Positions 1,276-63,760 of a stretch of DNA of 64,000 nucleotides are shown here, one piece after another. Position 1 is the first letter of the stretch, and each line of letters begins with the position of its first letter. This stretch comes from Octopus sinensis. Taxonomy: Eukaryota. The position numbers were made by a program, and so were the translations under genes. The notes below the pieces were generated by a model that saw only the letters and a program-made list of their open reading frames with translations, was not told the origin of the DNA and ran no database searches. The stretch covers positions 23,560,001-23,624,000 of the forward strand of contig NC_043009.1 of assembly GCF_006345805.1 (NCBI RefSeq). The letters run 5' to 3'.

Positions 1276-3245
1276 CGAAGAAAGTTAAACGAGAACGTTG
1301 ACTCAGAGATATTGCTTGGGCTGAATTCAAAAATCTGGATTCGACTGCAGCTTTTGAGGTGTACAAAACTCAACGAGACCGAGCCGTGAAAATTGAAACG
1401 AAAGAACGCTTCAGTTATGAATACAAAATCGCGGCAAATGCCAGTAACAATCCAAAAACCTTCTTTGCCCATGTCCAGCGGAATTCCCGCTTGAACAACC
1501 AGATTGCAACGTTGGTAGACTCAACAGGCGTATCGATTGAGGACCCTTATCAACAGAGTCAATTATTTGCCGAGGCTTTTTCAACTATTTTCAAACAAGA
1601 TGATGGTCGTGAACCCCCTCCATTTGATAGATCAGTACCTCCAATGCTTCGATTGATCATCATGCGGGACCAAGTCAAACGTGATATTCAAGGCCTCGAT
1701 GTCAACAAGGGTCACGGCCCTGACGGCATACACCCACGGGTTATCAAAGCGTTGGCTCTGGTCATCTGCGAGCCCTTAACACGACTATTCAATATGTCAT
1801 TGGCGACGGGTGTTATACCTGCAGACTGGAGAACAGCGATAATCTGCCCAATTTTCAAGAAAGGGAGCCGCGAAGACCCGCTTAACTACCGACCGGTTTC
1901 CCTTACATCAATAATCAGCAAGATGTTCGAAACCATCCTTAAGAAAAGTATGATGCTCCACCTCCTAAACACAGCCTCGATCACTGATTCCCAACACGGC
2001 TTCGTGCCGAAGAGATCATGCTTGACCAACTTACTAGTAATGGAAGAATTGGTGACGCGCATCCTCGATGATAGTGATGCTGTTGACATCGTTTTATTGG
2101 ACTTTGCCAAAGCTTTTGACTCGGTAAACCACCGCTTACTACTTGTCAAGCTTCAAGCATATAGTTTCCATCCAGATATTGTACGATGGGTTGGTGCCTT
2201 CCTCTCAGATCGCTCCTTCCAAGTTCAAGTTAATGGTTCGCGGTCCGACGTCTCCAGTGCGAGCAGTGGCGTGCCTCAAGGTTCAGTGCTTGGGCCCTTG
2301 TTGTTCTTAGTCTTCATAAATGACTTGCCCGACGACCTCATGCAACACACCCTTCTATTTGCCGACGATATCAAACTGGTCGCTCCTCGCGGTAGTATAG
2401 AGGATCTTCGTCGATGCCTCCACCAAATTTGGAAGTGGTCTAACGATTGGGACCTGTGTCTGAACGTGTCAAAGTGCTGTCATCTGCCTGTCGGCTCTAC
2501 TCCTGCAACTCAACTTGATTTCGAGCCGGGTCGTCTGCTGCTGGAGAGGACCGATCAGGTAAAGGACCTGGGTATCTTGGTGGATTCCTCCTTTTCGCCT
2601 TCGGCCCAGTGCGTCCATGCTGCCAACAAAGCGCGCGGAATTCTGTTTTTGATTCGACGGTCATTCGGAATGCTCACAGCAGCCATATTCCTGCCACTCT
2701 ATGTCACGCTGGTGAGACCCATATTGGAGTATGGGATTCAAGCCTCTTCTCCTTATCTCCTCAAAGACATACAGCACCTCAAAAGAGTCCAGAGGCTGGC
2801 TACCCGCATGGTTCATGATCTCAAAAATTTGTCCTACGAAGAAAGGCTGAGGACGCTCGACCTTTGTTCTCTTGAAAAACGCCGCCGCCGTGGTGATCTC
2901 ATTCTCGCCCACAACATCATAAGCGGGAAGTGTAACCTCTCGAAAGAGCTGTTCTTCACTCCTGCTCCGGAGCGTCGGCTGCGGGGTCATTCCGAAAAGC
3001 TCTACCTGTGACGATTTCATCTCAATCGAAGGAGAGGAGCTTTCTCCGTCCGGGTTGCGGATCCGTGGAACAAGCTGCCAGACGAGATGGTGAAGATGCC
3101 GACGACCGCTTTGTTCAAAGCCTCCCTGGACCTCAAGTGGCCTGAACTCTTTACATGAACATCACCCTGTACTTAACTCCATGTCCCCCTACATGGCCTT
3201 GCTATTTGCTTTTGAGCCAAATTAACTAACTAACTAACTAACTAA
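1276..3245 (+). mobile_element. 5'-truncated CR1/L2-like LINE (RT region plus 3' UTR), (TAAC)n tail
   Basis: Continuous RT frame from about 1276 to 3158, short 3' UTR, tail taactaactaactaactaactaa at about 3227-3245. Confidence 0.92.
1359..3158 (+). pseudogene. LINE ORF2 reverse transcriptase, with one internal premature TGA at 3009-3011
   Basis: Motifs GPDGIHP, NYRPVSLTS, DFAKAFDSV, GVPQGSVLGPLLF and FADD. The frame continues past the TGA as RFHLNRRRGAFSVRVADPWNKLPDEMVKMPTTALFKASLDLKWPELFT*, the usual CR1/L2 C-terminus. Confidence 0.92.
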
Positions 3246-3268
3246 TTTCAAGTAGCTGCCTTCATATA

Positions 3269-6746: not shown

Positions 6747-7165
6747 ATCATCATCATTTAACGTCTGCTTTCGATGCTGGTATGGGTTGGATGGAACTCG
6801 CCAGCTGTAAAGCTGTCTGAAGTTCCTGTCTGTTTTGGCCTGCTTTCTATGGCTGGATACCCTTCTTAATGCCAACCATTTTGCTGAGTGTATTAGGTGC
6901 TCTTACATAGTACCAGTATGGGTGCTTTGATGTGGCACCAGCACCCACGAACCCATAAGATTAGGATTGCTCCGCTGACAAGGGATCACACCTGTATGCA
7001 AGGACAACCATGATTTCACTTAGCCTGACATGTCTTCTCAAGCACAGCAAATCATCAGAAGTCTCAGCCCCTTGTCATCTCCTCTGTGGGGCCTAACATC
7101 TGAAGATCCTTTCTCACCATGTTATCCCATGACTTCCTGGGTCCGCCTCTTCCACATGTTCCCTA
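6747..7165 (-). mobile_element. 5'-truncated RTE LINE 3' end
   Basis: Minus peptide GTCGRGGPRKSWDNMVRKDLQMLG, RTE 3' UTR and (GAT)n tail. Confidence 0.8.
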
Positions 7166-7390
7166 ACATAATAATCCTTTCTACTATAAGCACAAGGCCA
7201 GAAACATTAGGGAAAGGGTCTAGTCAATTACATCAACCCCAGTACTCAATGGGTATTTATTTTAATGTCCCTGAAGACATGAAAGGCAAAGTCGACCTTG
7301 GCAGAATTTGAACTCAGAATGTAAAGATGTATAAAATGCTGCTGAGCATTTTTGCCTGATGTGCTAAAAATTCTGCCAGCTCACCACCTT
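7166..7390 (-). mobile_element. SINE family B
   Basis: Head ggtggtgagctggcagaatttttagcac and B box gagttcaaattc on minus. Confidence 0.8.
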
Positions 7391-13106: not shown

Positions 13107-13139
<33 letters not shown>

Positions 13140-13644
13140 TTGTGAATGTATATCTGAAGGAACTTCAAAGAAGAGACACAGGTAGACAGACAGAAAGCCA
13201 ACATATGAACCAAGTAAGTAGTTGTATGTTTCGAAATTGAAGTAGTTGTATGTTTTGGTAAGTCGATGAAGATGTTATAGAGCCGATCAACCGATCAACA
13301 TAAGAAGGAAGATCAATACAGCTTTATTAACTATAAAAAATAATAAATCACTACTAACATCTATAAACATGTCATCAATGAAGATTGGTCAAACTATTAA
13401 ATTTATCTTCTCTGCAGCGAGGTGTAGGGGGTGGAATGAAAAACGGAGGTGGTGATCTTTATATTTATGCAATGTATCAATAATGTTTTTTTTTTGTTTT
13501 TGTTTTTTTTTTCAATACTCTTTAGAGTGAGGTGTCTTGTTTATAGGTACATAACTGTTTGTTGTTGCTGTTGTTGCTTAGCCCCAGGTCAGACCAGACT
13601 TACGATCAGGTGTTTTCCAACCATAATAAAGCAGTTTTACTCTC

Positions 13645-18818: not shown

Positions 18819-19376
18819 ACATATATATATATATATAAGCATCTTTCTCTCATATGTATGTTTGTGTGTGAATGAGTGTGGATAGACACACACACACACA
18901 CACACAATGACAAGCTTCCACTAGTTTTCATTCCAAAGACATTGGTCAGCTTGAGGCTATACCTATAGTGAGAGAAGGTACGCAGCTTAGTGGTTAGGGT
19001 GTTCAACTCATAATAATAAGATCAGGAGTTTAATTCCTGGAGTCACAATGTGTCCTTGAGCAAGACACTTTATTTCTCATTGCTTCAGTCCACTCAACTG
19101 GCAAAAATGAGAAGTACTTGTAAATTTCAAATGGCCACAGTCCAACGACTGAAACAAGTAAAAGATAAAAGATATATATTTATATCATATCATGTATGTG
19201 TGTGTGTGTGTGTGTGTGTGTATTATATCATGTATGTGTATTGGTGTTAGGAAGGGCATCCAGCCATAGAAACCAAAGCATATCAGACTGGAACCTGATG
19301 CAGCTCTCCTGACCAACCCATACCAGCACGGAAAATGGACATTGAATGATGATGATGATTATGATGATTGTTATCT

Positions 19377-19607
19377 TATTTCTTTACTGCCCAGAAAGGG
19401 CTACACACAGAGGGGGCAAACAAGGACAGACAAACGGATTAAGTCGACTATATCGACCCCAGTGCGAAACTGGTACTTATTTAATCGACCCCGATAGGAT
19501 GAAAGGCAAAGTCGACCTTGGCGGAATTTGAACTCAGAACGTAACAGCAGACAAAATGCTGCTAAGCATTTCGCCCAGCGCGCTAACGTTTCTGCCAGCT
19601 CGCTGCC
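19377..19607 (-). mobile_element. Full-length SINE subfamily B2 (Tx1-like tail)
   Basis: B head and body plus tail aatccgtttgtctgtccttgtttg...gggcagtaaagaaata. Confidence 0.85.
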
Positions 19608-20391
19608 TTATGATGATTGTTGTGAGTGTGTAGTATATGGTATGTGGAGGATAAACAAGATTACATAATTACCTAAGTAACAGGTTGGCTCAATCGGATT
19701 GTGTTTATATAATCCTGTTAACAGGCATATCAATATACAATGCACAATTCATACACACAGAGAACAATTAGCAATGTAAATCAACTACATGTAGATTTTT
19801 CACCTGGGATGTACTTTTTACGCTTTGCTTATTTGCTTTTTTTCTTTTTTCTTCACTATTTCTTTTCCTTCCCTCTTTCCATGGGACATACTATTCTCTA
19901 TAAGAAGGCTGATGTCTGGATTTTACGATTAAGTTTCTCTCTGTCTGAGGTAGCCATGTTTCTCCTCTAACGTAAGACACCTTCTTTTGTCCCTCACTAC
20001 TCTAACCTCACCTCAGTTGAGCGGGGTCTTGCCTTGCAAGCTATTTGGTGACCTCACTGTTGCTGGTGCCATGCAAAAGAAAAGCATGGAGTACACTCTG
20101 TAAAGTGGCTGGCATTAGAAAGGGCATTCAGCCATAGAAAGCATGTCAAAACATACAACTGGAACCTGGGCAAGATCTCTGGTTGGTCAGCTCCTGTCAA
20201 ACCATCCAACCCATGCCAGCAGGGAAAATGCACATTAAATGATCAGGAGATGATGATGATGTTGATGGCGTGTGTGTCTTTGTGTCAGTCTCCCACCACT
20301 GCTTTACAACTGGTAGTGGTGTGTTTACGTCCTCATAACTTAGTGGTTTCACAAAAGAGCCTTATATAAGTACCAGGCTTAATAAGTTCTG

Positions 20392-20589
20392 GGCGGTGAG
20401 CTGGCAGAAACATTAGCAGGCTGGGTGAAATGTTTACCGGTATTTCGTCTGTGTTAAAATTCCGAGGTCGACTTTGCCTTTCATCCTGTCAGGGTCGATA
20501 AATTAAGTACCAGTTACACACTGGGGTTGATCTCATCGACTGCCCCCCCGCCACCCATTCCAAGCCTTGTGCCTAGATTAGAAAAGAAT
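20392..20589 (+). mobile_element. SINE family B with a 12-bp TSD, inserted in an A-type tail
   Basis: aataagttctgg at 20381-20392 and 20590-20601. Confidence 0.85.
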
Positions 20590-20807
20590 AATAAGTTCTG
20601 GAGTTGATTCATTTGACTAAAAATTCTTCCAGGCAGTGCTCCAGCATGGCCACAGTCTAATGACTGAAACCAGAAACAGATAGAAGATATATATGCATGT
20701 GTGTGCATGTGTGTGAGTGTGTCATAAAGGCTCAATCACCACCATTTTGCCAATAAGCTTTAAAAAAATATACACTGCAGACTCTCTAATGCTGTTCTGG
20801 GGAGCTA

Positions 20808-24138: not shown

Positions 24139-24238
24139 NNNNNNNNNNNNNNNNNNNNNNNNNNNNNNNNNNNNNNNNNNNNNNNNNNNNNNNNNNNNNN
24201 NNNNNNNNNNNNNNNNNNNNNNNNNNNNNNNNNNNNNN
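24139..24238. other. Assembly gap (100 N)
   Basis: Run of N. Confidence 1.
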
Positions 24239-43638: not shown

Positions 43639-43689
43639 CAAAACGTCAACAACAACGATGTCTGCAGAATAATCCTTTCTACTGGAAGG

Positions 43690-44066
43690 AAACACAAGGC
43701 CTCAGATTTTGGGGAAAGGATTAAGTCGATTCCATCGACCCCAGTATGTAACTGGTACTTATTTGCGACCCCGAAAAGATGAAAAGCAAAGTCGATCTCA
43801 GCGGAATTTGAACTCAGAACGTAACGGCAGACGAAATACCTATTTCTTTACTACCCACAAGGGGCTAAACACAGAAGGGACAAACAAGGACAGACAAACG
43901 GATTAAGTCGATTACATCGACACCAGTGCGTAACTGGTACTTAATTTATCGACCCGAAAGGATGAAAGGCAAAGTCGACCTCGGCGGAATTTGAACTCAG
44001 AACGTAACGGCAGACGAAATGCCGCTAAGCATTTCGCCCGGCGTGCTAACGGTTCTACCAGCTCGC
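43690..44066 (-). mobile_element. Nested SINE B dimer: a B2 copy whose tail abuts gtatttcgtctgccg of a second B copy
   Basis: Junction at 43839/43840: gtaaagaaatag|gtatttcgtctgccg in the sense orientation. Confidence 0.85.
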
Positions 44067-44149
44067 AATCTTTGTCTGCAGAATAATAATAACAAAAACT
44101 GTAAGTGATGACAGCGATCCTAACAACAACCGCTGACATTTGTATACAC

Positions 44150-53389: not shown

Positions 53390-53553
53390 TATTTCTTTAC
53401 TACCCACAAGGGGCTAAACACAGAGAGGACAAACAAGGACAGACAAACGGATTAAGTGCGTAACTGGTACTTAATTTATCGAACCCGAAAGGATGAAAGG
53501 CAAAGTCGACCTCAGCGGAATTTGAACTCGGAACGTAACGACAGACGAAATAC
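53390..53553 (-). mobile_element. 3' half of the host SINE B2 split by the Tx1 LINE
   Basis: The 5' half of the same SINE lies at 58820-58882. Confidence 0.9.
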
Positions 53554-54002
53554 GAATTTCTTTATTGCCAAACATAGATATGGACAGTACAACTGATGGG
53601 ATCAGTGAATCGATATGATTTTACCGAATGGAATACACAATACAAAAACAATACAAATGAAGCGATGATCAGGTTACGCTCCGACCCCACAAGCCCCGAT
53701 CTACCGCTGATACCTTTTTCCCCCCTTTTTTTCGTCTATTCACACGGTTCCTTGCACGCACAACACTCGTGCAACATGCTTCCATCTCTTTTGGAACGTA
53801 CACTCCGACAGACACCTCTTCTCCAGTCACAGTTTCCTTTTCAAATGAAAAGAAAAAAAAGATCGTAAATTGTGGCCAGAGATAAAGTTGCCTGTCTTAA
53901 TTCCTTTTATCCTAGTCTTCCATACTGCCTCTTTTGCTATTGCTACAACCGTGAGAAAACAATTCTTACCTTCGTTCGTTAGAACTCCTGGTGGGTCAAT
54001 TT

Positions 54003-57000
54003 TTATAATTGACTCAGTCGACAGCTGTACTCTTCCTTCATTTCAGTTATCTCCGGACACTGAACAATAGCGTGAAGGACGGTTTCCCTGTCCCCCACGC
54101 AACTTGGACAGGTCGGCGACTGACGTTTACCATGTCTTGCGAGCTTATCCCAAACGGGCAAGGCACCTCTGTAGCATTGCCAGGTTAAGGACTTTTGGAA
54201 GTTGTCCAACGTTCTCAACCCGAATGTACGATGGAACAGGCTGTCCAGTTGAATAAATCCGAGACCTAGAGTCGACCCCAGGCCATCGTCGCATTCAGAC
54301 TCTACCAACCCACTATATAAAATCCGTGTGGAACCCCCACCGGTGGCGTTGCCCGAGCGCCGGAACAGCAAGAGGGCCTTACGGCACTCTTTATAACACT
54401 CACTCGACCTCGGTCTATGAGAAAACCAGGCTTCCTGTTCGCAAAAACTCTTGAACACAGGGAACATTTGTCTGGCTAGCGGAGACCACACCCGTTCACT
54501 ATCCAGGAAAATCCAGAGGTGCCTCAACCTCAACGCATGTCTGCGCATCATTAACCAAGGCATCCCTAAACCTCCCTTTAAAGGCTTTTGACAGCAGACA
54601 GAGCGTTTCACAAGTGGCGACCTGCCCTTCCACAAAAAGCGAAAAAGCTGTCTCTCCAACCTGATCAACCACGAATCCGGACAGGGCACGACGGTCAGGC
54701 GGTAGGTAATAACCGATGCGATAAACACATTGGCCACCTCCGCTCTCCATTTCAGGGATAGCCACCGCCAAGACCAGGTCTTGACTACTGCAGCCACCCT
54801 GCTCAATACCTCCGTCCAGTTCTTCTCTATCTGGAGGCCTGGTCCAAACCAGACTCCCAGCAACTTAACCGGTCCCTCCGTCCAGCGCTCAACAACGCTG
54901 TCGGAAGGCATCGACTTGCCAACCCAGGTGCCGAGCTGCAAGCCGACCGACTTTTCCCGGTTAATCTTTGCTCCTGCTACCTCCTCGTAAGCCTCAATAA
55001 TCTTACCTACTTCACGTAGGCGTGCTACTCTGGTTACACTGATAGTGATATCATCCGCGAAAGCCGTAATAAACTCCTCTAGTCCTGGTTCTCTCGGGAT
55101 GCCACTCAACCTTCGCAGTAATGGCTCGAGAGCCATCACATACAAAAGTGGTGAAAGCGGACATCCTTGACGAACCGAGCGTTTGATGCAGAACGGCTTC
55201 GAAAGGAAACCGTTCACCCGAACTATTGAGTCAATGTTGTGGTACAAAGCGATAAACCACCTGAGGAAGCCAAGACCCAGGCCAAACCGCGCAAGTACAG
55301 TCGCTAGGTATCGATGGTCAACCCTATCAAAAGCTTTAGACTGGTCCAAATGCACCAATGCCCCACCTTTGCCAGATTTATTACCAACCTTCTCTATGGT
55401 ATAGCGAATAAGATGGAGGGTATCCTGAATGGTTCTGCCTGGGTTGGCACATGTCTGTGCCTCCCCGACTATACCATTCGCGACACGCGCCAACCTTTTT
55501 GCTAGAACCTTGGTCAAAATCTTCACTTCTGCGTTTAACAGAGTGATGGGCCTGAAATTCTCTAGAACGTCCCCCTTATCCGGGTCCTTTCTGACCAACG
55601 TCACTACTCCCCGGCGCACAAATCTGGGGATAAACCCATTCTGTTCCCAGTTCGCGTACACGTCAGTCAGTAGTTGCCCGAACAAGTCTGGCATATATTT
55701 ATACAGCTCGTACGGAAGACCATCAAGTCCCGGCGACTTACCCGCTTTACAATCGGCCAAAGCCTCCATCACCTGCTCAGGCGTGATTGGCCCTTCGCAA
55801 GACTCCGCATCCGACCCCGAGAGGCACGGCAGCCCGACAAGAAAGTCCTCGAGGGCTCTCCCACCACCAGGACCGCCGTCACCTCCGAACAGCTGGACGA
55901 AGTACTCCCGAAAGACCTCACACATTTTCTCGGGTTCGTTTACCAAGACACCATTTTGATTCGTCAAAGACCAAATAGAGGAACTATTTCCTTGCCGAGC
56001 TTCCACCACTCGGGCCCATCCAGCAGCCTTGATTCCTTCACTTCCCATTGCACGTAACTTAGCTCTGGCAATACTTCCCATATGGTGGGCTTCAAGATGC
56101 TGGTTTAACTCCGGTCTTTTCACCCTCGCTTGGTCTGCATTACCAGTCCTCCAGGCTTCTTCTAGTTCCTTAACTAGACCATCTCCTATTTTACGTCCCT
56201 TCTTAGCTAAACTTATGCAAAACCCAATAGACTCATATTTGATGGCTCTTTTTAGGGCCTACCACCACTTGTTATTAATGATGGTACTTGTTAATGCCCT
56301 CTGTATTAACATCTTGACCCGCTTTCTGTACTCCCCAATCGCCAAAAGGGACGTATTGAGTTTCCAGTAGCCAGATCCCTGTCTATGCAACTTATCTACC
56401 GTCAGTTTACAGGTAACCATCTTGTGGTCACTGTAGCTGACTAGAAAAAACTGTGGACACTCAACTATGGACTTATCTTTTTCTCTAATTAAAATCCTAT
56501 CTAGATATGTTCTGGTAGACCCGTCACTATTTGACCACGTCCTCTGTGAAGTGTTCGGGTGCTCCAACCTATATGAATCTGCTAGCTGAAATTGACTTAG
56601 CATATCACGAAAGCCTGGGTTACATTTTCTGTTCATGTTCGAGCTCGAGCCAACACAATCTGTGTGCTGCACATATTGTATTAAAGTCTCCTAACAGTAC
56701 TAGTGAATGCGACGTGGCTAGGAACTTTCCCAGGTCACGAAAATATTCAGTTTGCGGGACAAAGATGTTTGGTGCGTAAATAGCGACTAGCCTGATTGTC
56801 TTGCCACAACTGAATGCCAGGTCAAGAACGACCAACTTGCTTTCTGGGTAAAAAAAACCCAACTTTTTCTCGGCTACCCGGTTTCTTTTTAGTAGGACCA
56901 ACACCCCACCCCCACCTCCTGCCCGACTGGGAGAAACGTATTTCTCGTAGCCGTTCAGGAGGGGGAGCAGATCTCTTGGCCCCTTCACCCGGGTTTCCGT

Positions 57001-57108
57001 TGCAACAATTACATCCAAATTTCTCGACCTGATGTCATTTAGAAAGCGTCCTTGCTTCCAGCTTGACATCAGAACACGAACATTTATACAACCAATGTGA
57101 ATAGACAT
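54003..57108 (-). pseudogene. Tx1 ORF2: APE endonuclease, reverse transcriptase and C-terminal CCHC, with frameshifts and stops
   Basis: IHIGCINVR, ATETRV, LLGDFN, YLDRILI, SDHKMV, GSGYWKLNTSLL; GKSPGLDGLPYE, FRPITLLN, DQSKAFDRV, RQGCPLSPLL, AFADDIT; CPSCVGDRETVLHAIVQC. Confidence 0.95.
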
Positions 57109-57119
57109 GACTTATCTGT

Positions 57120-58641
57120 TTAATCAGGATTGTCCGGAGGAGGGGGACCCTCCACCTTTTTTTGATCCAGGGTCGGAGGTGGACGGTCTTGGGAAATAGA
57201 TTTGTCAAAATCCCGTCTCACCACCGACACAGAATTATCAGGTGGAGGGGGAGTCTCCACCTTTTCCTTTTCTCGCGGGATCGGGGCTGGTAATCCATGA
57301 AATATCGACTTGTTAAAATTTAATTTCATTGAAGATACTGTCTTTCTGTATTTGTTTTGTAAAATTCTATGAATCTTATTTGAGACTTCATATACGTCGT
57401 AATTGATAAATTCCTCTGAAAGGTAATCTTTTTTTTACAGTCTTTATCAGTTGAATGTCTCTCATTAGCTCAGTATCTTTAGTGTATACGGCTAGTATGC
57501 CTTTTCCTCTTCTGGCAGTCTTTTTTGGTCGTTGTTCTGTAGTAGTCGCCGCTCTCGGTTGAGTTGCTGGTTGTATTTTCCTTTTGTTTGTTGTTTTTTC
57601 TCATCTTTTTCTTCTTTTTCTTCTTCCTCTTTGTCTTTTTTCTCCTCTTCCTCCTCTTCTTCATTTTCCTTGCAGTTCCTTCGAATGTGGCCTAATTGAC
57701 CACATTAAAAAACATAGAGGTTTTCGACCTTCAACAAACACCACGAGGTTCTCCCCCCCTACCTCAATTGTCTCGGGAATTGCTTGAATTATTTTAGGGT
57801 CCGCTTGAATGAGGAGATTAATTGTTTGACCATCCCAGTGTGCGTTTTCGGTAGCGGTAGCCTGGAGGAGAGTAATTTTTTCTTCCTCTTTGATTAGGAC
57901 TGCCGCCAACAACAACATAGGGTCCACTTCCGGTGGGACCCTTGTAATTTTTATTCTGGACGTTCTCATTCCCATATAGGTGGGAATGATCTCCCCGTCG
58001 TTCGTTTTCAGTGTTTCTACTGAGTTCTTTTGTGCTATTTCTTTATTGGTGAACCTTACTTCCACCGTTCTGAATTTCTTGCCTCTTCTCAGATAAACTA
58101 CGTCGCCCCATATTGGCTTTAAGCACTTTTCTATTTTCTCTTCTGACATTCTTTCAATTTTTCTTTTTTGTAAACAATATGTTTTGAAAATTAATGTTTT
58201 TTGTTTTTCTTCTTGTAGTAACTTTTCCGGAGGTTCAATTTTCACAACGTTGTCAGTTATTTTCATCATTTGGCTATATTTCATAAAGTCTCTCTTATTC
58301 GTCGAAAGCATCCGGGTTCCACCCCCAGCTGCTAACGCAAAAATTTTTTTTCCCATTTTTTGGTTCTGTCTGGATGCTAGGTACATCAATCATTCTTTTC
58401 GACACAATGCCCTTGTTCTCTGGCAAAGTCGGAAACTCTTCTGGTGAAACTCTTCTGACGAGCTTTCAGACACATCTCCAAAAAAATCAAATATATTATC
58501 CATTCTGCTATTCCTTCTTGTAGCGGGAGAAACCCTTATTTCCCTGTCTGTAGTTGACTCCTCGCCGGACACGCATTTCCTCCTCTGAACAGGAGAAACA
58601 AATATTTCTGCTCCAACGGTAGGTTCCTTGCTAGACGACAT
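57120..58641 (-). pseudogene. Tx1 ORF1 (RRM-like region plus CCHC zinc knuckle), disrupted
   Basis: ATG at 58641, in-frame TGA at 58390-58392. A +1 frameshift near 57710 breaks the knuckle C-F-x-C-GQLG-H-IRRN-C. Acidic and Pro-rich C-terminus. Confidence 0.85.
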
Positions 58642-58819
58642 TCTTCCCCCCAAAGGGGGAATGAACAACGCGTGCTACTACAAGCACTAAGTGTTTTCAA
58701 ATGAAAACTCCAACAGTTAAGTTATTCAACAATTTAACAAGAAACAACAGTTATTAGAAACAGCAGTTATTAACAATATTAACACCAAGAAACGGCAATT
58801 TTTACCACGAACACATGTG

Positions 58820-58882
58820 CGGCAGACGAAATACAGCTACGCATTTCGTCTGGCGTGCTAACGTTTCTGCCAGCTCGCCGCC
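58820..58882 (-). mobile_element. 5' half (tRNA-like head) of the host SINE B2
   Basis: ggcggcgagctggcagaaacgttagcacgcc...gtatttcgtctgccg on minus. Confidence 0.9.
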
Positions 58883-59660
58883 TTATCACCAACAGTCTGT
58901 TCTACTGGGATTTCACACGTAAAAAAGTCAAGTGGACGAGCTCTCTGGTGTTAGATCAATCAAACTGAGTGTACTCGCTTATCCGGTACACTTCCACTTA
59001 TCTGGTACTTAAATAATCACAACTCTCAAGCAACCGGCACCTAGGAAAAGTGGGTGGAGGAGATAAAAGAACGAATACGTGTTGTTTATTAATCAAGAGA
59101 ACTTATGCTAATTTATGCTAATTTATGTTAATTGACATTAACAGAAACTTTTAGCTCGGTGCAGCATTTTCTTTTACAGTATTTACTAGACCTGTATGTT
59201 ATCTTTTTTATGTTTTATTTTTTACTTGTTAGACTGCGACCATGCTGGGGCACCACCTTGAAAGGCATAGTCGAACAAATCAACATTAGTACATGTTTTA
59301 TTTTTGAAGTTTGGTACTAATTTTATCGGTCCCTTTTACCGAACCGCCAGTTTACAGGGACGTAAACAAACAAACATCGGTTGTCAAGTGGTGCTACGGA
59401 AACAAACAGAATGGTACGCACACATGTATGTATTATGTTGTGTGTGTATATCTTTCAGCTTTTTTTTAGTCATTTGACCACAGCCATGCTGGGGCACTAC
59501 CTTGAAGATTTTTAGTCGAATGAATCGACCCCAGTATGTATTTTCCCTAAAGCTTGATACTCATCGGTCTCTCTACCGAACTGCTAAGTTATGGGGAAGT
59601 AAACATACCAACACTGCTTGAACACAGATACAAAGATATATATATCTGTTATATATATAT

Positions 59661-62014
59661 AAAGAGAGCACGGACATGCAGCCTACAAGAAACCCTCAGA
59701 ATCTTTCCAGCTTGAACTACCATAAGGCAAACTGGAAACAAATTGAGAAAGAGATCCTCAAACAAAACTGGCCTAAATGTCTCTCCTCGCCAGACATCGA
59801 CGTGTAACTTCAACAATTCATGTCTGTAATGCAAGCCATATGCTACAAATGTGTCCCAGAGAGAAAGGCCACTGTACACAAGAACAAAATCCCCAGAGAG
59901 AGGAAAATTTTAATGAGACGGCGTACAAAAATTTCAAATCGCCTAAACAAACAGATTGAAAGCAGTGAAAAGTCCCGCCTAAAAATAAAACTGTTGGAAA
60001 TTGAAAAATGTCTGCAACTCTCCCATGAAAAGGAAAGAGCAGACAAAGAAGCCTGGGCTATAGACAACATAAAATCTAACCCCAGAGCTTTCTACAGGTA
60101 TGCGAAAGAAACAGCTACGGTGCACTGTAGAATAGGGCCACTCCTTGAAAAGGATGGCACACTTACAGGAAAACCAATGAGGGTAAGTGAAATACTGAAT
60201 GAGCAATTCAAGAGTGATTTCACTCCACCCCTTGGGCATCTCCAAATCACCAATCCAACTGACTTCTTTACCACTGCAGATACAAAATCAGAGGCGGCGA
60301 CGATAGATTACATCGATATAAAGGAAGACGATGTAATAAAGGCTATAGATGAAATGAAAACAGACTCAGCTACTGGCCCCGATGGATTCTCGGCAATCCT
60401 CCTAAAAGCATGTAAGAGAGTCCTAGCAAGACCACTGCAGTTCCTCTTTCAGAGCTTCCTTGCAGCTGGCAAACTTCCAAGAAAACTGAAGGAAGGTAAA
60501 ATATGCCCCATTCATAAAGGAGGTAGCAGAGCGGAGGCCAAGAACTACAGACCTATCTCTCTGACCTCACACATCAGCAAGGTCATGGAACGAATAGTCA
60601 GAAGGAAACTGATCACCTTCCTTGAAGAAAATGACTTGCTGCCCGACACCCAACATGGTTTCCGACCAGGGAGAAGCTGTTTAACTCAGCTCCTACAACA
60701 CTATGACTGGGTGCTGAAACGGCTGCTCAACCACTCAAATGTGGAAGTGATATATCTCGACTTTGCAAAGGCCTTTGATAAAGTCGATCATGGAATGATA
60801 TGTCACAAACTGCGTGATCTCAACATAGTTGGAAAACTGGGAGAATGGCTCCATGACTTTCTGAAAGATAGAAGTCAGGTGGTAGTAGCCAATGGGGCCA
60901 CTTCCATTAACACGCAAATAGTGAGCGGTGTCCCGCAGGGCACTGTTCTGGGACCACTACTGTTCATAATGGCCCTCTCAGACATGCCCTCAGCCACGCA
61001 GAGAGCCACGATCACAAGTTATGCAGATGATACAAAAGTTTCACAGGCAATACAGAACCCTGAGGACACTAAACGCCTGCAATGTGAGCTAGACAAAATA
61101 TACAAGTGGGCTGAAAAGAATAGCATGCAGTTCAATGCTGAAAAGTTTCAAGCTTTATACTATCAGCATGCAAAACTAAATGCAATACCCAATGAATACA
61201 CTGGACCCGAAGGAACAGCAATCCCAGAGGCACAATCAGTGCGTGACCTAGGTATTTACATGAGTGATGACGCAACCTTTCGTGTTCATGTTGCTAAATT
61301 GGCAATGAAATGTAGACGACTGGCCGGATGGATTCTCAGAACCTTTAGAACAAGAGAACAAGAAACCATGATGGTCCTCTGGAGGACACTTGTCGTAAGC
61401 CACTTTGACTATTGCTCTCAGTTATGGTCACCATCCAGTGTCAAGTTGATCACAGAGCTCGAGGCGATCCAGCGTAGCTACACGAAGAAGATAGCCTCTA
61501 TGCAGAATGTAAGCTACTGGGAAAGACTCAAGAGATTAAACTATATTCCTTGGAGCGTAGGCGGGAAAGATATGCCATAATATACATCTGGAAGATCCTG
61601 GAGGGACGTGTCCCAAACTTTGGCATCGAGAGTTACACAAATGCCAGAACTGGGCGCCACTGCGTGGTGCCTAGGACTCCAAATTTGCCATCAAGATGTA
61701 GGACAAGATACTGTGATAGCCTGGGCTTCCGAGGCCCACAGCTCTTCAATATCCTCCCGAAGAACCTGAGAGACCTGCATGGAGTGGATGCAGATGTCTT
61801 TGAAATGAAACTGGATCTCTTCCTGTCAGGTGTCCCAGATGAACCAACTTCACGGCAGGAGGTGCAGATGAGGGCAGCTGCATCGAACTCCCTCATGCAC
61901 CAAATGGCAGTTGCTAGAAAGCGTTCGTGAAGTAAAACCAAGTAGCAACACCAAATGGCGGTGCCCCAGCATGGCCGCAGCTCATGAGCTGAAACTAGAA
62001 TCAATCAATCAATC
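59661..62014 (+). mobile_element. 5'-truncated CR1/L2-like LINE with (AATC)n tail
   Basis: The RT frame starts near 59665. 3' end ggcggtgccccagcatggccgcagctcatgagctgaaactag(aatc)n. Flanked by (TA)n. Confidence 0.93.
59820..61930 (+). pseudogene. LINE ORF2 reverse transcriptase (frameshift near 61536, upstream TAA near 59806)
   Basis: GPDGFSAILLK, NYRPISLTS, DFAKAFDKV, GVPQGTVLGPLLF and YADD. The C-terminus continues in the 61550-61930 frame (LERRRERY...LFNILP...VDADVFEMKLD). Confidence 0.93.
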
Positions 62015-62041: not shown

Positions 62042-62390
62042 GGCGCAGGAGTGGTTGTGTGGTAAGTAGCTTGCTAACCAACCACATGGTTCCGGGTTCA
62101 GTCCCACTGCGTGGCATCTTGGGCATATGCCTTCTGCTATAGCCCCGGGCCGACCAATGCCTTGTGAGTGGATTTGGTAGACGGAAACTGAAAGAAGCCT
62201 GTCGTATATATGTATATATATATATGTATGTGTGTGTTGCGGTTCGGCAAAAGAGACCGATAGAATAAGTATTGGGCTTACAAAGAATAAGTCCCGGGGT
62301 TGATTTGCTCGACTAAAGGCGGTGCTCCAGCATGGCCGCAGTCAAATAGCTGAAACAAGTAAAAGAGTAAAAGAGTAAAGAGATATACGC
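62042..62390 (+). mobile_element. SINE family A with an internal deletion
   Basis: Starts ta|ggcgcaggag after (TA)n; (AAAGAGT)n tail. Confidence 0.88.
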
Positions 62391-63170: not shown

Positions 63171-63360
63171 TCGGTTGTTATTTCTTGTACATCGGACGAC
63201 CATGTGTAAGCTTCGATGTTGACACAGACTCTTCCAATGGTTCTTCAGTTGTAATTGTTGTTGTTTTTATCTTCGTCGTAGGAGTGGCTGTGTGATAAGT
63301 AGTTTGCTTACCAACCACATTGCTCCGGGTTCAGTCCCACTGCGTGGCACCTTGAGCTAA

Positions 63361-63760
63361 ATATTTTGTCTGCCGCTACGTTCTGAGTTCAAATTCCGCC
63401 GAGGTCGACTTTGCCTTTCATCCTTTCGGGGCCGATTAAATAAGAACCAGTTATGCACTGGAGTCGATATAATCAACTTAATCCGTTTGTCTGTCCTTGT
63501 TTGTCCCTTCTGTGTGTAGCCCCTTGTGGGCAGTAAAGAAATAAGAAACGTTAGCACACAGGGCGAAATGCTTAGCGGTATTTCGTCTGCCGTTACGTTC
63601 TGAGTTCAAATTCCACCGAGGTCGACTTTGCCTTTCATCCTTTCGGGGTCGATAAATTAAGTAGCAATTGCGCACTGGTGTCGATGTAATCGACTTAATC
63701 CATTTGTCTGTCCTTGTTTGCCCCCTCTATGTTTAGTTCCCTGTGGGCAATAAAGAAATT
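63361..63760 (+). mobile_element. Tandem/nested dimer of SINE B2
   Basis: The copy 1 tail gcagtaaagaaata joins agaaacgttagcac of copy 2. Copy 2 ends gggcaataaagaaatt. Confidence 0.85.

What the first reader, a model, noticed from the sequence alone, without database searches (positions are those of the whole stretch)
53554..53625. The Tx1 3' end matches the B2 SINE tail: the target family also hitchhikes on the LINE
Seen: the LINE ends ...ctgtccata-tctatgttt-ggcaataaagaaatt(c). The B2 copy at 63700-63760 ends ...ctgtcc...tctatgttt...ggcaataaagaaatt, with the last 15 nt identical. Other B2 copies end g(c/t)agtaaagaaata. Ordinary B copies have an unrelated tail (ctggccttgtgccaaaatttgaaacc). The LINE has a 6-bp hairpin actgat-ccc-atcagt just upstream. 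Inference: a closed loop in which the LINE targets SINE B, a B subfamily acquired the LINE's 3' recognition end, and its spread multiplies the LINE's target sites.
Basis: partly seen in the sequence, partly recalled or inferred. Interest (0 to 1): 0.8.

Follow-up and report, generated by a model that had tools for sequence, protein, structure and literature searches.

The report
LINE and SINE share a tail
A dead L1/Tx1-type jumping gene sits inside a copy of a short parasitic repeat (SINE) whose 3' tail was borrowed from that same LINE lineage. This is a classic LINE-SINE partnership, found here in an octopus-like genome, and the claimed self-feeding loop is only weakly shown.

Summary
A 5,265-nt L1/Tx1-type LINE (minus strand, 58819->53555) ends in ggcaataaagaaatt, identical to the end of the B2 SINE copy at 63746-63760.

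Within the window the match is only modestly significant. LINE relatives from Argonauta hians and a JGI contig (59-61% aa identity) settle it: their ends match the whole B2-specific tail over about 55 nt (0 of 4,902 random windows score as high).

The shared module contains a 4-bp hairpin with loop CUUGU. Its stem covaries across SINE subfamilies and LINE relatives.

The LINE is a true insertion into a B2 SINE. It has a 15-bp target-site duplication, and joining the flanks rebuilds the SINE. A second B2 copy is nested in another SINE at the same nucleotide (head position 52/53).

- The "unrelated" ordinary B tail carries the same hairpin and matches the 3' UTRs of cuttlefish LINE relatives.
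- This LINE copy is dead and lacks the hairpin, so it may not be B2's driver.
- B2 also inserts outside SINEs.
- Tx1 placement was not tested by phylogeny.
- The closed loop rests on two events.

Verdict: a new member of a known kind, a stringent-type LINE/SINE pair with shared target preference.

The parts
53555..58819 (-). L1/Tx1-type LINE, apparently full-length, 5,265 nt, a dead copy
   Evidence: Single copy in the window. Pfam finds Exo_endo_phos, RVT_1 and zf-RVT. Best solved relative is human L1 ORF2p, E 1e-45, against R2 at 1e-21. ORF2 needs two frameshifts and has one in-frame stop.
57661..58389 (-). ORF1 (242 aa as listed). A CCHC knuckle-like motif follows after a frameshift; this was read by eye.
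56620..57108 (-). ORF2 N-terminal piece: apurinic-type endonuclease domain
   Evidence: Pfam PF03372, E 1.2e-8
54003..56123 (-). ORF2 reverse transcriptase plus zf-RVT piece (706 aa). The true C-terminus continues in another frame to about 53745.
53555..53587 (-). LINE terminal tail ctgtcc-ata-tctatgttt-ggcaataaagaaatt, homologous to the B2 tail but missing the 11-nt hairpin segment
53592..53606 (-).
   Evidence: Present in the MFE fold, but the 80-nt fold has z -0.29 and the hairpin is not conserved in relatives.
58820..58834 (-). Target-site duplication, copy 1: gtatttcgtctgccg
53539..53553 (-). Target-site duplication, copy 2: gtatttcgtctgtcg (14/15 identical to copy 1)
58820..58884 (-). 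5' part of the host B2 SINE (head positions 1-67)
53390..53554 (-). 3' part of the host B2 SINE (from head position 53 to the tail gggtagtaaagaaata). It has a 19-nt internal deletion.
63544..63760 (+). B2 copy whose tail is closest to the LINE tail (30/30 identical in three blocks). It starts at head position 17, directly after the previous B2 tail.
63362..63543 (+). B2 copy starting at head position 53, preceded by an 85-nt fragment of SINE A. This junction is unexplained.
43841..44066 (-). B2 copy nested in a B' SINE. Its tail aaagaaata abuts ggtatttcgtctgccg, the same nucleotide as the LINE junction.
43674..43840 (-). B' SINE remainder (from head position 53 to the tail). The composite is flanked by the 15-bp TSD attattctgcagaca (44073-44087 and 43659-43673).
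19377..19609 (-). Full-length B2 copy inserted outside any SINE, in ATC-rich DNA. TSD aacaatcatcat(aa): 19610-19621 and 19361-19372.

Best explanation
The B-family SINEs of this octopod-like genome are non-autonomous partners of an L1/Tx1-type LINE clade.

Shown:
- The 62-nt B2-specific tail is homologous to the terminal module of the octopod LINE lineage, from ctgtccttg through a GC-rich 4-bp hairpin with loop CUUGU to AAUAAAGAAAU. The window LINE carries a shortened version of that module.
- The window LINE is a real insertion into a B2 SINE with a 15-bp TSD.
- A B2 copy sits in another family member at the same nucleotide, the loop/3'-arm boundary of the head palindrome cgaaatgc-ttagcg-gYatttcg.

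Inferred:
- The LINE reverse transcriptase recognises the tail (hairpin plus terminal A-rich run) and copies SINE RNA in trans by target-primed reverse transcription.
- The LINE endonuclease prefers, but does not require, the SINE-head site. Passengers therefore inherit that preference.
- Insertion at position 52/53 splits the A and B boxes of the target copy, so the site is a harmless landing pad.
- The tail passed from LINE to SINE.

Open: whether this exact LINE lineage, which lacks the hairpin, drives B2, or whether a hairpin-bearing sister lineage does.
For: Tail homology:
- Argonauta L001b scores 35 and JGI L003 scores 32 against the B2-specific tail; 0/4,902 random windows reach this; the alignments span about 55 nt.
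- the Argonauta-type pattern hits three B2 copies, with 0 expected.
- the window LINE's upstream blocks match copy 63545 at p about 0.002.

Hairpin covariation:
- 91% of cells pair, against 62-64% in shuffles (0/500).
- Covariation score is 0.66-0.71, against 0.16-0.19 in shuffles.
- Slid controls give 23-46% paired.
- Three of four pairs show double changes: GGC/GCC, GGCC/GGCC, GCCC/GGGC.

Insertion: one search shows the TSD is 14/15 identical and the joined flanks align end to end with B2 copy 44066-43841.

Same-site B2 nesting and TSDs of 12-15 bp. My estimate of two of six junctions coinciding by chance is of order 1e-4. It follows from SINE B covering about 4% of the window.

Age: one search gives B2 copies 2.7-7.5% from consensus and B/B' copies 10.7-20.6%.

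LINE type.

Precedent: Tx1-Mar and SINEU share a target (PMC4494074).
Against: - The window LINE itself lacks the conserved hairpin, has a short 3' UTR (about 190 nt) and is non-functional.
- Against the B2 consensus only the terminal 14-mer aligns.
- No second copy of this LINE family could be obtained, so its consensus tail and target spectrum are unknown.
- Only two junctions support the site preference. Other B2 copies lie elsewhere.
- The third position-53 boundary (63362) has no insertion explanation.
- RNA folds of the tails are not more stable than shuffles.
- Trans-mobilisation is not demonstrated.
Confidence: 0.68

Rival explanations
1. Right clade, wrong copy. B2 is mobilised by a hairpin-bearing sister LINE lineage, like the Argonauta and JGI relatives. 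The window LINE belongs to a derived or decayed lineage that merely shares ancestry of the tail and the habit of landing in SINE heads.
For: The hairpin is conserved in all SINE subfamilies and in all eight LINE-relative 3' ends aligned in A2, but is missing exactly in the window LINE. B2 consensus tails are closer to the Argonauta and JGI tails than to the window LINE.
Against: Copy 63545 shares three derived bases with the window LINE tail, giving 30/30 identity in blocks. That suggests recent exchange with this very lineage. No hairpin-bearing LINE 3' end is present in the 64 kb.
Confidence: 0.35
2. Reverse direction. This LINE lineage acquired its last 35 nt or so from a B2 RNA or copy, for example by template switching at the start of reverse transcription or by read-through from a SINE it had landed in. 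The tail would then be SINE-to-LINE here.
For: There is block identity to one B2 variant only. The window LINE has an unusually short 3' UTR and lacks the C-run and hairpin architecture of its relatives.
Against: LINE relatives at 59-61% aa identity from other taxa end in the same module, so the module is ancestral to the LINE lineage. The 15-bp TSD encloses LINE plus tail with no internal TSD copy.
Confidence: 0.12
3. The position-53 junctions are not a DNA target preference. They are an RNA-level hot spot where reverse transcriptase switches templates or stops at the head hairpin, producing chimeric cDNAs.
For: Three SINE copies start at position 53, one of them (63362) after an unrelated SINE A fragment with no TSD logic. 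The B2/B' composite is flanked by a single outer 15-bp TSD.
Against: The LINE has the SINE head plus a 15-bp duplicated segment upstream, which template switching does not produce. The B2/B' composite also contains the 15-nt segment twice, as expected for a nested insertion.
Confidence: 0.12
4. Chance resemblance. An A-rich end containing a poly(A) signal (AATAAA) matches by accident.
For: Within the window the only strong match is a 15-mer rich in A (E 0.006). The alignment to the B2 consensus has p about 0.009.
Against: Independent LINE relatives match about 55 nt of the B2 tail. The pattern test gives 3 hits against 0 expected. The hairpin covaries.
Confidence: 0.02

Closest known systems
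Stringent-type LINE/SINE pairs with a common 3' tail (Ohshima and Okada model; eel UnaL2/UnaSINE1; reviewed in PMC3747384)
   Same: The SINE tail is homologous to the partner LINE's extreme 3' end. There is a small conserved stem-loop with compensatory changes just upstream of the terminus. SINE subfamilies carry different tail variants.
   Different: The partner is an L1-like (L1/Tx1) LINE, a group where most members use relaxed poly(A) recognition. There is no terminal repeat or poly(A). The tail ends in AAUAAAGAAAU.
Tx1-Mar LINEs and SINEU SINEs of crocodilians (Kojima 2015, PMC4494074)
   Same: An L1/Tx1-type LINE and a SINE are found at the same position of the same repeated target. Nested and tandem insertions sandwich a TSD. 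The shared target preference is used to infer trans-mobilisation.
   Different: There the target is a Mariner DNA transposon and the SINE heads come from U1/U2 snRNA. Here the target is the head of the SINE family itself, and the link is a shared 3' tail. The evidence here is 2 junctions, against hundreds there.
Target-specific Tx1-group LINEs (Xenopus Tx1L in Tx1D; Keno, Kibi, Koshi, Mutsu; as summarised in PMC4494074 and PMC3747384)
   Same: APE-type L1-like LINE landing at a defined site in a multicopy sequence. One relative (L003) abuts an (ATT)n microsatellite, as Kibi and Koshi do with other microsatellites.
   Different: Specificity here is unproven (one LINE copy), and passengers also insert elsewhere. 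RT phylogeny with reference Tx1 sequences was not run.
Stringent L1-clade lineages with a conserved 3' hairpin (maize/sorghum L1 and their SINEs; Chlamydomonas L1-1_CR/SINEX-3_CR; PMC3472496, PMC3747384)
   Same: L1-clade LINEs with a conserved 3'-end hairpin, compensatory stem changes and SINE partners sharing it.
   Different: Those end in poly(A) and are from plants and algae. This one is from a cephalopod and has no poly(A).

Membership tests
LINE/SINE partnership through a common 3' tail (stringent type) | SINE 3' tail homologous to the 3' end of the LINE, running to the terminus in both | tested here: met
   about 55-nt alignments of the B2 tail to LINE relatives (0/4,902 nulls). The window LINE shares a 15-mer plus two upstream blocks.
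LINE/SINE partnership through a common 3' tail (stringent type) | Conserved stem-loop in the shared tail, supported by compensatory changes | tested here: met
   91% paired against 62-64% shuffled; 3 of 4 pairs with double changes. Caveat: the changes fall into about three lineages, so few independent events, and the window LINE copy itself lacks the hairpin.
LINE/SINE partnership through a common 3' tail (stringent type) | Same integration signature (TSD length) for LINE and SINE | tested here: met
   LINE 15 bp; B2/B' composite 15 bp; B2 at 19377-19609 12-14 bp. Small sample.
LINE/SINE partnership through a common 3' tail (stringent type) | Overlapping periods of activity | tested here: inconclusive
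   B2 copies are 2.7-7.5% from consensus. The LINE landed in a B2, so it was active after B2 arose. With one LINE copy (TSD 1/15 mismatch, broken ORFs) no age distribution is possible.
LINE/SINE partnership through a common 3' tail (stringent type) | SINE mobilised in trans by the LINE proteins, dependent on the tail | not testable with these tools
   Needs a retrotransposition assay.
Tx1 group of L1-clade LINEs | ORF1 plus ORF2 with APE endonuclease, RT and C-terminal zinc-binding domain; L1-like RT | tested here: met
   PF03372, PF00078, PF13966; human L1 ORF2p E 1e-45, R2 1e-21.
Tx1 group of L1-clade LINEs | RT groups with reference Tx1 elements in a phylogeny | not tested
   No named Tx1 reference could be retrieved (searches gave no names). 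Indirect support: L1-Tx1 is the only L1-like superfamily listed for octopus genomes (PMC13282606; PMC8967140).
Tx1 group of L1-clade LINEs | Sequence-specific insertion into a repeated target | tested here: inconclusive
   One LINE copy lies in the SINE head with a TSD, and one B2 at the same nucleotide. Relative L003 abuts (ATT)n. Other B2 copies are elsewhere.
Tx1-Mar/SINEU-type association (LINE and SINE sharing a target) | LINE and SINE insertions at the same position and orientation of the same repeat family | tested here: met
   Junctions aaagaaatt|c-gtatttcgtctg (LINE) and aaagaaata|g-gtatttcgtctg (B2), both in the orientation of the target SINE. n = 1 + 1.
tRNA-derived SINE | tRNA-like head with A and B boxes | tested here: inconclusive
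   ARAGORN finds no tRNA in the window, and Rfam finds none at gathering score. A B-box-like gagttcaaattcc and an A-box-like ttagcacgccggg are visible by eye only.

The most novel reading that the evidence does not exclude
The SINE family is both passenger and landing pad of its LINE, and this self-targeting pays. A B2 cDNA that lands at head position 52/53 of a resident family member is joined to that member's intact head. Even a 5'-truncated, promoter-less cDNA is then rebuilt into a full-length SINE with both promoter boxes, as the seamless composite 44066-43841 looks. The LINE meanwhile gains an ever-growing set of harmless target sites. That would be a self-reinforcing LINE/SINE/target loop with promoter rescue, which I did not find described in the papers searched.
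Probability: 0.25. Interest if true: 0.65.

Novelty: new member of a known kind. Interest (0 to 1): 0.42.

Why it matters
SINEs make up a very large share of octopus genomes: 11.6% of O. vulgaris (PMC13282606) and about 40% of the repeat content (PMC8967140). In the papers I could search, no driver LINE is named for them.

If the result holds genome-wide, it does three things:
- It ties one abundant octopod-like SINE family, with all three of its tail variants, to an L1/Tx1-type LINE clade.
- It adds a rare animal example of stringent, hairpin-dependent tail recognition in the L1 group.
- It gives a concrete RNA motif (GC stem, CUUGU loop, AAUAAAGAAAU end) and a concrete DNA target (SINE head position 52/53) that can be tested.

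The self-targeting twist would extend the Tx1-Mar/SINEU precedent.

Tried and rejected
- More copies from the same genome: the LINE is single-copy in the window. The closest public proteins are only 57-69% identical.
- A metagenome scan with the tail pattern returned only chance hits, none with SINE sequence.
- A viral-contig scan with the SINE core found nothing.
- The P0104 look-up found no record. The L002 and L004 contigs stop before the LINE 3' end.
- No Argonauta paralogs of P0002 were found, so target specificity could not be tested in a sister genome.
- ARAGORN and Rfam did not recognise the SINE head.
- Thermodynamic folding of the tails is no better than shuffles. The hairpin claim therefore rests on covariation only.
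- I first took 'ggggcttgtgggg' near 53690 for an internal copy of the hairpin box. It is the end of ORF2 (compare the stop-codon contexts in L002 and L003).
- No complementarity exists between the LINE RNA 3' end and the nicked target strand, so target choice by RNA-DNA annealing was rejected. This was read directly from the sequence.

Full report
**What is there.** The window is AT-rich, repeat-dense DNA. Its closest protein matches are from the octopod Argonauta hians at 57-59% identity, so it is octopod-like; the species was not determined.

On the minus strand, 58819->53555 is a 5,265-nt LINE. It has an ORF1 (57661-58389), an apurinic-type endonuclease piece (56620-57108) and a reverse transcriptase plus zf-RVT piece (54003-56123). 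The closest solved structure is human L1 ORF2p (E 1e-45, against 1e-21 for R2).

Against full-length relatives, ORF2 needs two frameshifts and contains one stop, and the real C-terminus ends near 53745. The copy is therefore dead, with a 3' UTR of about 190 nt. It is the only copy in the window.

**The SINE family.** The window holds about 14 copies of one SINE family with a shared 170-nt head and body and three tail variants.
- B: ...ctggccttgtgccaaaatttgaaacc.
- B': ...ggccttgtgcYtaNagtagaaaggattat.
- B2: ...cttaatccgtttgtctgtccttgtttgtcccttctgtgtttagccccttgtgggYagtaaagaaata.

There are five B2 copies: 19377-19609(-), 43841-44066(-), the LINE's host (58820-58884 plus 53390-53554, -), 63362-63543(+) and 63544-63760(+). 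B2 copies differ from their consensus by 2.7-7.5%, and B/B' copies by 10.7-20.6%. B2 is the younger subfamily.

Taken alone the match is modest. The 15-mer has E=0.006 within the window. Against the B2 consensus only a 14-mer aligns (p about 0.009). The 45 nt upstream of the 15-mer resemble copy 63545 at p about 0.002 and the other copies at p 0.02-0.065.

**Independent evidence for homology.** I fetched the 3' ends of LINE relatives.
- The Argonauta element (P0002, locus L001) and a 5'-truncated copy next to it end ...ttctgtgtcggcccttgtggctaataaagaaatc.
- A JGI metagenome contig (P0003, L003) ends ...ctgtccttgccttttgtatcgtccttaatgtttccgggcccttgtggccaataaaagaaatc and abuts (ATT)n.

These align with the whole B2-specific tail over about 55 nt, with scores of 35 and 32. 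None of 4,902 random windows reaches that (z 8.6 and 7.6). The Argonauta-type 23-mer pattern hits three B2 copies at 3 mismatches or fewer, with zero expected.

Because LINE lineages only about 60% identical in protein share the module, it is most simply ancestral to the LINE and was copied into the SINE.

**A conserved hairpin, and a correction.** All SINE tails and the eight LINE-relative 3' ends included in alignment A2 contain a 4-bp GC-rich stem around a loop that is CUUGU in most sequences; CAUGU, CUCGU and UAUAU also occur.

The stem differs between groups while keeping its pairing.
- UGGC/GCCA in B and in the more distant LINE relatives. These are L125 and L128 from the cuttlefish Acanthosepion pharaonis, and L126, L127, L129 and L131 from ENA contigs.
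- GGCC/GGCC in the octopod LINE lineage.
- GCCC/GGGC in B2.

On the 17- and 20-sequence alignments, 91% of cells pair, against 62-64% after shuffling (0/500). The covariation score is 0.66-0.71 against 0.16-0.19. Slid controls give 23-46% paired. Three of the four pairs show changes on both sides. The changes fall into about three lineages, so the number of independent events is small.

The ordinary B tail also matches the cuttlefish and ENA LINE 3' UTR ends directly: ggccttgtgccaaaatttg against ggccttgtgccaaatttt, scores 25-31, null maximum 23 (0/5,876). All three subfamilies carry tail variants from this LINE clade.

**The awkward point.** The window LINE itself lacks the hairpin. Relative to B2 its tail has gaps of 9 and 11 nt, and the second gap removes exactly the hairpin. 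Two such deletions within 35 nt are more than the decay seen elsewhere in the element. The shortened tail may therefore be a lineage feature.

Either this lineage recognises less, perhaps only the terminal 15 nt or so, or B2's real driver is a hairpin-bearing sister lineage. Copy 63545 shares three derived bases with the LINE tail (30/30 identity in blocks), which argues for recent exchange with this lineage in one direction or the other.

**Insertion into the SINE.** Upstream of the LINE lies a SINE head ending ...gcgtagct-gtatttcgtctgccg (58884->58820). Downstream the SINE resumes with c-gtatttcgtctgtcg... (53554->53390). The 15-bp duplication is 14/15 identical. Joining the flanks gives a B2 that aligns end to end with copy 44066-43841, apart from a 19-nt internal deletion. 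This is a genuine target-primed insertion.

A second, independent event uses the same nucleotide. The tail of B2 copy 44066-43841 (...aaagaaata) abuts ggtatttcgtctgccg of a B' copy (43840->43674). The 15-nt segment is present twice, as a nested insertion predicts. The whole composite is flanked by its own 15-bp TSD, attattctgcagaca.

The site is the boundary between the loop and the 3' arm of a head palindrome, cgaaatgc-ttagcg-gYatttcg. It lies between the A-box-like and B-box-like segments, which were read by eye.

SINE B DNA covers about 4% of the window. By my estimate, two of six junctions coinciding to the nucleotide has a chance of order 1e-4.

It is a preference, not a rule. B2 19377-19609 sits in ATC-rich DNA with a 12-14-bp TSD, and copy 63544 follows another B2 tail at head position 17. 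A third copy starts at position 53 (63362) after a fragment of an unrelated SINE. I cannot explain that junction.

**Mechanism.** The shown steps are the tail homology, the covarying hairpin, the TSD-flanked LINE insertion in the SINE, the same-site B2 nesting and the similar TSD lengths.

The inferred steps are these.
- The LINE ORF2 protein binds the tail and primes reverse transcription at a nick in the SINE head or at other A/T-rich sites.
- SINE RNAs with the tail are copied in trans.
- The tail passed from LINE to SINE when the subfamilies arose.
- The SINE head serves as a safe landing site.

I found no complementarity between the LINE RNA end and the nicked strand, so target choice is likely made by the protein.

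**Comparison with what is known.** LINE/SINE tail sharing with a small 3' hairpin is the textbook stringent type (PMC3747384). Stringent lineages within the L1 clade are few (PMC3472496).

The nearest precedent is Tx1-Mar and SINEU in crocodilians. There an L1/Tx1 LINE and a SINE share a preferred site in a Mariner transposon, and nested insertions sandwich TSDs (PMC4494074).

What differs here is that the target is the partner SINE family itself and that the link is a shared 3' tail. My literature searches found no description of an octopus LINE-SINE tail pair of this type. Repbase and Dfam could not be consulted.

Tx1 membership rests on domain content, L1-like RT and behaviour. It also fits the fact that L1-Tx1 is the only L1-like superfamily annotated in octopus genomes. 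No phylogeny was possible.

**Verdict.** This is a new member of a known kind, with a plausible but thinly evidenced self-targeting twist.

Noticed in passing
window 59820-62005 (+) and 62045-62365 (+): A second LINE/SINE tail pair. The 3' end of a CR1/jockey-like LINE (RT ORF 59820-61580; ...ggcggtgccccagcatggccgcagctcatgagctgaaactag, 61950-61995) matches the tail of the abundant SINE A (...ggcggtgctccagcatggccgcagtcaaatagctgaaacaag) at 45 of 51 aligned positions. SINE A has at least 15 copies in the window and an internal TA/TG microsatellite.
   Followed up: partly
window 63270-63375 (+): An 85-nt 5' fragment of SINE A ends at ...ggcaccttgagctaaa and is joined directly to a B2 copy that starts at head position 53. 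That is the same nucleotide as the LINE and B2 insertion junctions, but there is no SINE head or TSD upstream. It could be a chimeric cDNA, a rearrangement or a composite SINE. Unexplained.
   Followed up: partly
window 63520-63570 (+): Two B2 copies lie head to tail. The tail aaagaaata of the first is followed at once by the second copy, which starts at head position 17 (agaaacgttagc). This is a different junction from position 53.
   Followed up: no
window 7150-7232 (-), 20530-20610 (+), 43660-43730 (-): A third tail variant of the SINE (B'): ggccttgtgcYtaNagtagaaaggattat. It keeps the CUUGU hairpin partly through G-U pairs.
   Followed up: partly
L003 2019-2105; window 19340-19376: The JGI LINE relative ends directly at an (ATT)n microsatellite. 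B2 copy 19377-19609 has its TSD in ATC-rich repeat DNA. A/T-rich trinucleotide repeats may be an older or alternative target of this LINE clade.
   Followed up: no
L129/L130 (ENA contig ctg14421c): Two copies of a related LINE encoding the identical 1,143-aa ORF2 lie head to tail about 6.5 kb apart on one 15.9-kb contig. This is as expected for tandem insertion at a repeated target, or for an assembly of a circular or tandem form.
   Followed up: no
L001 8014-8285 and 8420-8652: In Argonauta, a full LINE 3' end and a separate 5'-truncated copy of the same 3' UTR lie about 130 nt apart. Between them is a tRNA-like B-box sequence (ggttcaatc). This is possibly local target preference there too.
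   Followed up: no
window 1359-3250 (+): A third, unrelated LINE (RT 24% identical to the L1/Tx1-type one) ends in (TAAC)n.
   Followed up: partly
window 13136-13245 (+): Rfam group-II-D1D4-3 match just at the gathering score (32.2 against 32.0 bits, E 0.009), in a microsatellite-rich stretch. It is probably spurious in this eukaryotic-looking DNA.
   Followed up: no
window 24139-24238: A run of 100 N (assembly gap) lies next to SINE fragments.
   Followed up: no
window 53455-53465 (-): The host B2 of the LINE has a 19-nt internal deletion. It removes the body hairpin gtcgat-gta-atcgac that all other copies keep.
   Followed up: no
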